A model generated the notes under the pieces. The model made no database searches. It was not told where the DNA came from and worked only from the letters and a program-made list of their open reading frames with translations. Of a stretch of DNA of 64,000 nucleotides, positions 3,042 to 3,980 are shown in pieces. Origin of the DNA: Octopus bimaculoides (taxonomy: Eukaryota); the NCBI RefSeq assembly GCF_001194135.2, contig NC_068991.1:54352425-54416424 (forward strand), in the 5' to 3' direction. Position numbers and translations under genes: made by a program. The first letter of the stretch is position 1. Each line of letters starts with the position of its first letter.

Positions 3042-3715
3042 GAATGAATAAATATCAATGTTGATGTAGCGTTTTTTATTTGGCTCCAAAAACTCTTGAC
3101 AGCAGTATCTGTACAAATGCAATAGGCTATTTATCCTTTACATGGAGTATTTTTTGCAAAGGAAGAAAGGACACATAAAAAAAAAAAATTAAAAAACGGA
3201 CTTAGTAGTAAAACCCAATGAAATAATAAGCCATCAATAATTTAAAGCTAAATAATTCTTAAACATTTCAAAATAATATACTATTTTTATGAACTGTTTT
3301 AGGGTTTTCTTTTTTAATGAATAATAACAAATTTTTATCACTTTTAAATAATTTCCAAGTAATAAATTCAGTGTCTTTCTTTAATTTGGTTTAATATGAA
3401 AGAATAAATAAATACAATATTTTACTGTTTTCATTTAACGAAATCATGTGAAGTTTCGGCATTTTTATCAATATAAAAAAACAATGCGTCTTTCAGAAAA
3501 CAACCGCAACTTTTCGTTTAGGCAACTAACAGAGTTCGTTGCTAAAGGGCGACGTGTTGTCTGGAATAATTACAGTTGTTATATTGTCCGTTGAATTCGT
3601 GGATAAACTGTGATAACAAGTTACACAATCTGAATTTTTTAATTCACAGATTGCAGCGGATAGAACTGGTAAAGGTACTAAGAGACCGTCGTTAAGTTGC
3701 AGGGTTTTAATAAAA

Positions 3716-3730
3716 ATGTTACTTAGAAAG
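3716..3730 (+). CDS. Candidate alternative RyR first coding exon (MLLRK), possibly part of an 81-nt exon 3650-3730
   Basis: TAAAAA-ATG TTA CTT AGA AAG|GTGAGT is a consensus phase-0 donor compatible with exon 2. No ATG in 3487-3715. Possible acceptor TTTTTTAATTCACAG| at 3649. No transcript evidence. Confidence 0.4.
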
Positions 3731-3980
3731 GTGAGTGAAGAATCGTGTTGAGGATGGATTTGGTGTTGGAAGGTGATTGAGAGATCGTGCCGAGAATGAA
3801 TTAGGTGCATGAAGCAGATAGAGAGAAAAATGAAAGAAGGAATAAGATTTAACTTGGCTCGGTGAAAATAAGAAACCGAAAGATTGAGTTAAGAAATGAG
3901 TGCAAGAAAGAGAATGTTGTAAGTGCTTAAACAGTAGCATCAAAGATAGTAAAAGGATGCGTTGATGAAGGAGTATGATA

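What the first reader, a model, noticed from the sequence alone, without database searches (positions are those of the whole stretch)
3487..3736. Candidate alternative RyR first exon giving a minimal N-terminus [13 protein letters not shown]
Seen: 1.1 kb upstream of the canonical ATG lies a ~230-nt ATG-free, CpG-containing stretch, then TAAAAA-ATG TTA CTT AGA AAG|GTGAGT. This is a consensus donor in phase 0, the phase exon 2 needs. Its end (LLRK) mimics the canonical exon-1 end (FLRT), so the first strand of the N-terminal domain would be kept while the acidic tail is dropped. An acceptor at 3649 would make an 81-nt exon open only in this frame. Inference: a second promoter producing an N-terminally distinct RyR isoform, or a 5' UTR exon.
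Basis: partly seen in the sequence, partly recalled or inferred. Interest (0 to 1): 0.7.

Follow-up and report, generated by a model that had tools for sequence, protein, structure and literature searches.

The report
Possible upstream alternative first RyR exon
About 1.1 kb upstream of the normal start of a ryanodine-receptor (calcium-release channel) gene lies a short sequence with the marks of a second first exon, which would give the channel a shortened N-terminus; the sequence statistics favour it, but no RNA evidence or close-relative comparison could be obtained.

Summary
ATG 3716-3718 opens ATG TTA CTT AGA AAG|GTGAGT. It is preceded by a 229-nt ATG-free stretch (3487-3715) and is in the phase that RyR exon 2 (56248) needs.

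By a heuristic matrix, the donor is the best of 3,600 GT sites on the + strand. A combined first-coding-exon signature (donor as strong as the real ones, in-frame ATG, ATG-free leader of at least 200 nt) occurs at only three places on both strands: this site, the canonical exon 1, and one minus-strand site. In simulated sequence of local composition it appears in about 1.5% of 4.9-kb stretches. It never appears there with an xLRx-type end (0 of 9,000).

The last 13 exon bases plus 5 intron bases match the canonical exon-1 end at 15 of 18 positions. This is the only such match in the window (0.02 expected). Thirty-one arthropod RyR loci have none.

A TATAAAA box sits at 3472. The canonical ATG exon has no good acceptor, so the two look like mutually exclusive first exons.

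I found no transcripts, no close relative and no conservation data. My best reading is a real alternative first exon encoding MLLRK-EDIV… (about 0.45). C. elegans unc-68 is a precedent. Interest is modest.

The parts
3472..3478 (+). TATAAAA box, about 23-30 nt upstream of the inferred transcription start
   Evidence: One of only 15 TATAAAA on the + strand of the window, and the only one between 3000 and 5000. It lies 9-15 nt before the start of the ATG-free stretch. Its function is inferred.
3492..3497 (+). Initiator-like TTCAGA (A at 3495); inferred start zone about 3495-3505
   Evidence: Read from the sequence. This is a motif match only and was not tested.
3487..3715 (+). 229-nt ATG-free, CpG-retaining stretch: the inferred 5' leader of the candidate exon
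   Evidence: ATG positions and 11 CpG, o/e 1.4. Local CpG peak at 3401-3600, o/e 1.96. Single copy within the window. No Rfam or tRNA match.
3648..3649 (+). Optional AG acceptor that would make an 81-nt internal exon (3650-3730)
   Evidence: Heuristic score 1.2, rank 197 of 3,127. The 81 nt are open only in the MLLRK frame. This is judged less likely than a first exon starting near 3500.
3709..3714 (+). AATAAA hexamer just before the candidate ATG
   Evidence: Read from the sequence. It could act as a poly(A) signal unless masked by U1 at the nearby donor. Such hexamers are common by chance in this AT-rich DNA.
3716..3730 (+). Candidate coding part of exon 1a: ATG TTA CTT AGA AAG = MLLRK, ending in phase 0
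   Evidence: A at -3 (AAAAATG). It is the only + strand site apart from the canonical exon 1 with the pattern [FLIMV][LIMV]R[TSKR]|GT[AG].
3728..3736 (+). 5' splice site AAG|GTGAGT (GT at 3731-3732)
   Evidence: The only AAGGTGAGT in the window on either strand. Rank 1 of 3,600 GT sites on the + strand by a heuristic matrix; the two real donors rank 26 and 27.
3718..3735 (+). 18-nt copy (15/18 identical) of the canonical exon-1 end plus donor (4922-4939)
   Evidence: The only non-self match in the window with up to 3 mismatches; 0.02 expected. Similarity does not extend further. None of 31 arthropod RyR exon-1 loci has such a second copy.
4101..4109 (+). Second strong donor-like site, CGG|GTGAGG (last exon base 4103)
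   Evidence: Rank 2 of 3,600 on the + strand. Its role is unknown. It could be an alternative end of an upstream exon, or chance.
4875..4934 (+). Canonical RyR exon 1 coding part: MADSAEPGGGEQDDISFLRT, donor ACG|GTAAGA
   Evidence: The same N-terminus and the same exon boundary occur in insects, nematodes and others. The 237-nt ATG-free leader starts at 4638. The best upstream acceptor is weak.
56248..56373 (+). RyR exon 2 (EDIVCLSC...[15 protein letters not shown]), the shared acceptor exon
   Evidence: Its acceptor ranks 5 of 3,127. PDB RyR N-terminal domains match at E = 1e-16.

Best explanation
The stretch from about 3500 to 3730 is a genuine alternative first exon (exon 1a) of the ryanodine-receptor gene, driven by its own TATA-type promoter about 1.1 kb upstream of the canonical first exon (exon 1b).

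Proposed mechanism (inferred):
- Transcripts start near 3495-3505 and carry an ATG-free leader of about 215 nt.
- Translation initiates at ATG 3716.
- The donor at 3730|3731 splices directly to exon 2 at 56248. Exon 1b is bypassed because it has no usable 3' splice site.
- The product begins [13 protein letters not shown]... instead of [28 protein letters not shown]....
- It therefore keeps a hydrophobic-hydrophobic-Arg mimic of the FLR that opens the ordered N-terminal domain, but loses the conserved acidic tail.

The 15/18 DNA identity with the end of exon 1b suggests that exon 1a arose by duplication of the exon-1 end, or has been held to the same coding and splice requirements.

Shown: the sequence features and their statistical rarity.
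Inferred: transcription, splicing to exon 2, translation, and any tissue specificity.
For: - Donor AAG|GTGAGT is unique in the window and ranks 1 of 3,600 on the + strand. The real donors rank 26-27.
- The composite signature (donor at least as strong as the real ones, in-frame ATG, ATG-free leader of 200 nt or more) occurs at only three sites on both strands in all phases. One is the canonical exon 1 and one is this site.
- Monte Carlo with local composition gives p = 0.014-0.018 for one such phase-0 site in 4.9 kb, and 0 of 9,000 with an xLRx end as well.
- The 18-mer identity to the exon-1 end has an expectation of 0.02 per window. Of four non-self near-matches to the 10-nt exon part, only this one abuts a donor. 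The 31 arthropod control loci (143 kb) have none.
- TATAAAA at 3472 is the only one within 2 kb, and there is a CpG peak at 3401-3600.
- Exon 1b has no good acceptor (best rank 349), while the exon 2 acceptor ranks 5 of 3,127.
- Several cryo-EM RyR chains in the PDB have sequences that begin at or just before the FLRT position, so the acidic tail is probably not part of the ordered fold (the inference is mine).
- Precedent: C. elegans unc-68 has mutually exclusive exons 1.1 and 1.2 from two promoters with tissue-specific use (PMC7644089).
Against: - There is no transcript, CAGE or proteomic evidence of any kind.
- No conservation test was possible. The only relative found (L032) covers 962 nt upstream, aligns only in the coding exon, and shows no second copy.
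- None of the RyR N-terminal fragments in the protein libraries begins with an MLLRK-like peptide.
- The acidic tail EQDD[IV]SFLRT is conserved from nematodes and insects to this animal, so an isoform lacking it would be unusual.
- AATAAA at 3709-3714 lies inside the proposed exon.
- Similarity to exon 1b is confined to 18 nt. As a generic local alignment of two 500-nt regions it is within noise.
- The splice-site matrices are generic approximations written from memory, not trained on this species.
- All features were assembled after the fact by a reader looking for exactly this pattern.
Confidence: 0.45

Rival explanations
1. Chance look-alike or decayed pseudo-exon. The upstream region is untranscribed (or only spuriously transcribed) promoter-distal DNA. 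The ATG, donor and LLRK resemblance have no function. It may be the remnant of an old partial duplication of the exon-1 end.
For: - No expression or conservation evidence.
- Similarity is limited to 18 nt; a local alignment of the two 500-nt regions is within shuffle noise.
- ATG-free gaps of 230 nt or more occur 28 times in the window and three times within 3484-4875.
- AT-rich DNA gives many TATA-like and AATAAA motifs.
- Neutral intergenic DNA is not purged of strong donors; the minus strand has six comparably strong sites.
- The finding was selected after the fact.
Against: - The joint signature is rare: p of about 0.015 for the composite alone, and 0 of 9,000 simulations with the xLRx end.
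- The expectation for the 18-mer match is 0.02 per window, and it is absent in 31 control loci.
- A decaying duplicate would not be expected to keep a perfect donor, the reading phase, a start codon and an ATG-free leader while losing all other similarity.
Confidence: 0.3
2. Non-coding leader exon. Transcription starts near 3500 and the 3730 donor splices to a weak acceptor just upstream of the canonical ATG (4778|4779 or 4799|4800). The protein is then the canonical one. ATG 3716 opens a 25-32-codon upstream ORF that ends at TAA 4857-4859, 15 nt before the main ATG, and damps translation.
For: - There is a 109-nt AG-free zone before AG 4777-4778, with a CACTAAC branch-point-like motif at 4686-4692.
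- Both joins keep the ATG 3716 frame open to the same TAA (read).
- Some arthropod RyR genes have a strong acceptor 120-150 nt upstream of their ATG, so their ATG exon is probably internal.
Against: - Acceptors at 4778 and 4799 rank 349 and 1,178 of 3,127, with G or purine-rich sequence where a pyrimidine tract is expected.
- AG-free zones of 80 nt or more occur 55 times in the window.
- This reading leaves unexplained why the exon end copies the coding end of exon 1 in frame.
- The canonical exon has its own 237-nt ATG-free leader and TATA-like motifs at 4562-4602.
Confidence: 0.12
3. First exon of a separate transcript, such as a promoter-upstream non-coding RNA or an unannotated neighbouring gene, that happens to lie ahead of RyR. 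Its donor pairs with acceptors unrelated to RyR exon 2.
For: - A cluster of the three best + strand donors at 2875, 3730 and 4103.
- The region is CpG-retaining over 24 kb, so it could hold several promoters.
Against: - No other coding potential nearby: Pfam finds nothing in the local ORFs and Rfam finds nothing.
- It is on the same strand as RyR, immediately upstream, in phase with exon 2, and copies the exon-1 end. A separate transcript predicts none of this.
Confidence: 0.05
4. Internal 81-nt exon (3650-3730) of a longer 5' UTR or coding region whose true first exon lies further upstream.
For: - Acceptor-like tttttaattcacag|A at 3649.
- The 81 nt are open in only one frame.
Against: - The acceptor is only rank 197 of 3,127.
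- The ATG-free stretch and CpG peak extend 160 nt upstream of that acceptor, to a TATAAAA box.
- The RyR fold begins at FLRT, so extra upstream coding sequence has no homologous counterpart.
- The open frame runs only from 3617 to 3750, which is not unusual in this DNA.
Confidence: 0.05

Closest known systems
C. elegans unc-68 (RyR) alternative promoters with mutually exclusive first exons 1.1 and 1.2 (PMC7644089)
   Same: A single invertebrate RyR gene has two transcription starts, each with its own short coding first exon joined to a common exon 2. This gives isoforms that differ only at the extreme N-terminus.
   Different: In the worm, promoter 2 and exon 1.2 lie inside intron 1, downstream of exon 1.1. 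Here the candidate lies upstream of the conserved exon. The worm exons are shown by reporters, cDNA clones and CRISPR deletions; here nothing is shown at the RNA level. The paper's text, as read, does not give the exon 1.2 peptide, so I could not compare sequences.
Canonical RyR first coding exon (M-acidic tail-FLRT | phase 0), conserved across bilaterians
   Same: The candidate ends with the same codons and donor (TTN CTT AGA ANG|GTRAG), is in the same phase, and would join the same exon 2.
   Different: It encodes 5 residues instead of 16-20 and lacks the EQDD[IV]S acidic segment. That segment is present in all 31 arthropod loci, in the nematode and vertebrate fragments, and in the relative P0210.
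Non-coding 5' leader exons with upstream ORFs in animal genes
   Same: A strong promoter-proximal donor, a leader free of ATGs, and a short ORF that could act as an upstream ORF if the exon joins the ATG exon.
   Different: That arrangement needs a usable acceptor before the main ATG. Here those acceptors score poorly.
Gene-model artefacts: RyR models whose N-terminus is intron read-through before exon 2 (e.g. MVLLSLSLSLSLGLQ-DDEVVLQC in fish models)
   Same: They also replace the acidic tail with a few residues in front of the exon-2 sequence.
   Different: Those peptides end in Q (CAG acceptor read-through) and are contiguous with exon 2 in the genome. The candidate is 52 kb away from exon 2 and ends at a donor, so it can only reach exon 2 by splicing.

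Membership tests
Ryanodine receptor gene, N-terminal exons (context of the finding) | Exon 1 + exon 2 peptide is homologous to the RyR N-terminal domain | tested here: met
   PDB search: insect RyR N-terminal domains 6lqk and 5y9v at E = 1e-16, and mammalian RyR1/2/3 at E = 1e-8 to 1e-11. 87 hits in the representative library.
Alternative first exon of a RyR gene (unc-68 type) | Consensus 5' splice site at the exon end | tested here: met
   AAG|GTGAGT is unique in the window and ranks 1 of 3,600 GT sites on the + strand. The matrix is heuristic.
Alternative first exon of a RyR gene (unc-68 type) | Initiator ATG in frame with the common exon 2 (phase 0), with no stop between | tested here: met
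   ATG 3716, five codons, phase 0. Exon 2 starts in phase 0 at 56248.
Alternative first exon of a RyR gene (unc-68 type) | Leader free of upstream ATGs | tested here: met
   229 nt ATG-free. The canonical exon has 237 nt.
Alternative first exon of a RyR gene (unc-68 type) | Own promoter and transcription start | tested here: inconclusive
   TATAAAA at 3472, initiator-like TTCAGA at 3492-3497 and a CpG peak. These are motif matches only, and no CAGE or RACE data are available.
Alternative first exon of a RyR gene (unc-68 type) | The other first exon lacks a 3' splice site (mutual exclusivity) | tested here: met
   The best acceptor within 200 nt upstream of ATG 4875 scores -0.4 (rank 349 of 3,127), against rank 5 for the exon 2 acceptor. 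The matrix is heuristic.
Alternative first exon of a RyR gene (unc-68 type) | Splice junction to exon 2 observed in RNA | not testable with these tools
   No transcript data for this organism. Exact look-ups of five window ORFs found nothing in the contig collection, and the protein searches found no close relative.
Alternative first exon of a RyR gene (unc-68 type) | Conservation of the exon in related species | tested here: inconclusive
   The only relative reachable (P0210; L032-L037) aligns in the 60-nt coding exon alone (76%) and holds at most 962 nt upstream, with no second copy there. The 31 arthropod loci have no second copy either, but they are too distant to count.
Non-coding leader exon spliced to the ATG exon | Usable 3' splice site between the donor and the main ATG | tested here: inconclusive
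   Sites at 4778 and 4799 rank 349 and 1,178 of 3,127. The best site in 3731-4875 is 4355|4356, score 3.9. There is a long AG-free zone with a CACTAAC motif before 4778.

The most novel reading that the evidence does not exclude
This animal's single RyR gene has a second, TATA-driven promoter and a five-codon first exon that arose by copying the end of the ancestral first exon. The resulting channel isoform lacks the acidic N-terminal tail, which is conserved across bilaterians, but keeps the first ordered residues of the N-terminal domain. As in C. elegans, the two first exons would be used in different tissues (for example neurons versus muscle).
Probability: 0.4. Interest if true: 0.45.

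Novelty: new member of a known kind. Interest (0 to 1): 0.35.

Why it matters
Invertebrates have one RyR gene that must serve muscle, neurons and other cells. How that one gene is diversified is known in detail only for C. elegans, which uses alternative promoters and first exons.

A second example in a distant lineage would give a natural experiment on the acidic N-terminal tail. That tail is conserved across bilaterians but its function is unassigned. Here only the tail would be removed, while the first ordered residues are kept.

It would also improve the gene model and identify a promoter usable for tissue-specific reporters. If the exon is not expressed, the case shows how convincing a silent pseudo-exon can look.

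Tried and rejected
- Protein word-index search with the 62-aa exon 1+2 peptide found nothing at E <= 0.001. At E <= 10 it found one 40-aa exon-1 ORF of an unidentified relative. Its contigs (L032-L037) were too diverged and too short upstream to test conservation.
- The exhaustive representative search returned RyR N-terminal fragments of many animals, but none close to this species and none starting like MLLRK.
- A chimeric 683-aa query showed that the indexed database lists no protein longer than about 1,200 aa. Full-length RyR isoforms therefore cannot be retrieved, and no cephalopod or mollusc entry appeared.
- Exact look-ups of window ORFs in the contig collection found nothing.
- The metagenome scan for the exon-1 coding pattern gave 31 arthropod loci. 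They served only as negative controls.
- Extended similarity between the two first-exon regions: none beyond 18 nt. The idea of a recent tandem duplication of promoter plus exon is rejected.
- The candidate is not part of a repeat. It is single copy in the window, whereas the nearby 2844-3041 element is a multi-copy SINE-like repeat.
- The ATG-free CpG stretch is not a structured RNA or tRNA gene. The mir-297 hit at 4544-4610 is a low-complexity match far below threshold.
- Local ORFs on both strands have no Pfam match.
- A literature search for the peptides found nothing.
- The taxon could not be confirmed. My data show only a protostome-type RyR in an AT-rich, microsatellite- and SINE-rich scaffold with many gaps.

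Full report
**Context.** The window is AT-rich eukaryotic DNA (about 35% G+C) with many microsatellites, 18 assembly gaps (5,589 N) and a multi-copy SINE-like repeat.
- On the + strand it carries the first two coding exons of a ryanodine-receptor gene.
- Exon 1 is ATG 4875 to 4934: MADSAEPGGGEQDDISFLRT|GTAAGA.
- Exon 2 lies 51 kb downstream at 56248-56373: EDIVCLSC...[18 protein letters not shown]|GTATGT.
- The joined peptide matches insect RyR N-terminal domains in the PDB at E = 1e-16 and mammalian RyR1-3 at 1e-8 to 1e-11.
- The acidic tail EQDD[IV]SFLRT and the phase-0 boundary after FLRT recur in insects, nematodes, vertebrates and an unidentified relative.
- I could not confirm the taxon.

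**The observation.** It is correct at the stated coordinates.
- ATG 3716-3718 is followed by TTA CTT AGA AAG and then GTGAGT.
- The preceding ATG is at 3484, so 3487-3715 is 229 nt without ATG. It holds 11 CpG.
- With the AG at 3648-3649, an 81-nt exon would be open only in the MLLRK frame. That frame is open from 3617 to 3750.
- Three points need correcting. CpG retention is a property of the whole first 24 kb, not of this stretch alone, although 3401-3600 is a local peak.

**Is it more than chance?** Five tests bear on this.
1. *Donor strength.* AAGGTGAGT occurs once in the window on either strand. With a generic 9-position donor matrix it ranks first of 3,600 GT sites on the + strand. The two real donors rank 26 and 27. 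The next two best + strand sites, 4103 and 2875, lie in the same 1.3 kb. The 51-kb intron has none of that strength on the sense strand, but six on the antisense strand.
2. *Composite signature.* I asked how often the window shows a donor at least as good as the real ones, an ATG with an open frame to it, and an ATG-free leader of at least 200 nt. On both strands and in all three phases this occurs three times: the candidate, the canonical exon 1, and one minus-strand site. In 9,000 Markov sequences of local composition, a phase-0 site of this kind appeared in 1.4-1.8% of 4.9-kb stretches.
3. *Similarity to the exon-1 end.* The exon end copies the canonical exon-1 end: GTTACTTAGAAAGGTGAG against GTTTCTTAGAACGGTAAG, 15 of 18. 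This is the only match in the window with up to three mismatches, against 0.02 expected.
   - The 10 exon bases alone have four non-self near-matches in the window. Only this one abuts a donor.
   - At the peptide level, [FLIMV][LIMV]R[TSKR] followed by GT[AG] occurs only at the canonical exon, at the candidate, and once on the minus strand.
   - No simulated composite site had such an end.
   - None of 31 arthropod RyR exon-1 loci (143 kb) has a second copy of its own exon end, even at 14 of 18.
   - The similarity does not extend beyond 18 nt. Taken as a generic local alignment it is within noise. A recent duplication of the whole promoter-exon unit is therefore excluded.
4. *Promoter motifs.* TATAAAA occurs at 3472, one of 15 on the strand and the only one in 3000-5000. 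It lies just before the ATG-free stretch, with an initiator-like TTCAGA at 3492-3497.
5. *No acceptor on the canonical exon.* The canonical ATG exon has its own 237-nt ATG-free leader and no convincing 3' splice site; the best ranks 349 of 3,127. The exon 2 acceptor ranks fifth.

[quoted passage not shown] The matrices are approximations from memory, and the features were collected after the fact. I therefore discount the nominal probabilities heavily, but they remain small.

**What it is not.**
- The stretch is single copy in the window and is not part of the neighbouring SINE-like element.
- It has no Rfam or tRNA match.
- No local ORF on either strand has a Pfam match.

**External evidence sought.** I could not reach transcripts or genomes of this species or a close relative.
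- The word-indexed protein database lists no protein longer than about 1,200 aa, so it cannot return full-length RyR isoforms.
- Exact look-ups of window ORFs found nothing.
- The exhaustive representative search returned many RyR N-terminal fragments, none like MLLRK.
- Several annotated fish and bird models replace exon 1 by a few residues ending in Q. Those are intron read-through before exon 2, not spliced first exons.
- At a relaxed threshold I found one relative's exon-1 ORF, MADSAEIGGSEQDDISFLRT|V..., and fetched six contigs. Only the 60-nt coding exon aligns (76%). At most 962 nt of upstream sequence is available, and it has no second copy.
- The conservation test therefore remains open.

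**Precedent.** In C. elegans the single RyR gene unc-68 uses two promoters with mutually exclusive first exons 1.1 and 1.2. [quoted passage not shown] The kind of arrangement proposed here is therefore known for invertebrate RyR genes.

**Mechanism and rivals.**
- *Best reading (about 0.45).* A TATA-driven start near 3500, translation from ATG 3716, and splicing 3730 to 56248. The product begins [13 protein letters not shown].... It keeps a Leu-Leu-Arg mimic of the Phe-Leu-Arg that opens the ordered domain. Several cryo-EM chains in the PDB have sequences that begin at or just before that point. The product drops the acidic tail.
- *Silent look-alike or decayed partial duplicate (about 0.3).*
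- *Non-coding leader exon (about 0.12).* It would join a weak acceptor at 4778 or 4799. ATG 3716 would then open a 25-32-codon upstream ORF ending at TAA 4857-4859.
- *Separate upstream transcript (about 0.05).*
- *Internal 81-nt exon (about 0.05).*

Points against the best reading:
- There is no RNA or conservation evidence.
- The tail that would be lost is deeply conserved.
- An AATAAA hexamer sits at 3709-3714 inside the exon.

**Verdict.** If real, it is a new member of a known kind. It would be of modest interest to RyR and cephalopod or invertebrate physiologists, and easy to test with junction reads, 5' end mapping, and the isoform-specific tryptic peptide [14 protein letters not shown] versus [15 protein letters not shown].

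Noticed in passing
window 1-64000 (switch near 24000-26000): CpG observed/expected is 0.5-1.9 over the first 24 kb but 0.1-0.4 from about 26 kb to the end. The change lies about 20 kb inside RyR intron 1. It suggests a large CpG-retaining (probably germline-unmethylated) 5' domain followed by a CpG-depleted gene body.
   Followed up: partly
window 2844-3041 and at least 12 further copies (e.g. 10483-10684, 16366-16493, 21626-21786, 32972-33133, 38386-38558, 59058-59233, 61472-61635): A SINE-like repeat of about 170-200 nt, 72-84% identical between copies, in both orientations. One copy ends about 450 nt upstream of the finding and carries the third-best donor-like site on the + strand (2875).
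   Followed up: partly
window 4935-56247 (intron 1), both strands: The sense strand of the 51-kb intron has no donor-like site scoring 11.8 or more, while the antisense strand of the window has six. This is consistent with purging of strong cryptic donors from the transcribed strand. It is based on a heuristic matrix only.
   Followed up: no
window 4101-4109: CGG|GTGAGG is the second-best donor-like site on the + strand. It lies between the candidate exon and the canonical exon 1. Its role is unknown.
   Followed up: no
window 63254-63271, minus strand: This is the only other place in the window with the composite first-coding-exon signature: ATG 63271, donor after 63254, 203-nt ATG-free leader.
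   Followed up: no
window 3709-3714: A canonical AATAAA hexamer lies immediately before the candidate ATG and 17 nt before the donor.
   Followed up: no
L032 962-1085 (also L033-L037): The exon-1 ORF of an unidentified relative (ENA ERZ23498860/ERZ23498523, Logan SRR22034051-55) has N-terminus MADSAEIGGSEQDDISFLRT. Its ATG-free leader is only 23 nt, so its ATG exon may be internal. The contig ends carry inverted copies of a repeat.
   Followed up: partly
L008, L025, L027, L028 (arthropod RyR exon-1 loci): Strong acceptor sites lie 117-148 nt upstream of the RyR start codon. This implies a 5' UTR intron in some arthropod lineages but not in others.
   Followed up: no
window 4544-4610, minus strand: Rfam mir-297 match at 30 bits (threshold 90) in TA/TG low-complexity sequence. 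It is almost certainly a chance match.
   Followed up: no
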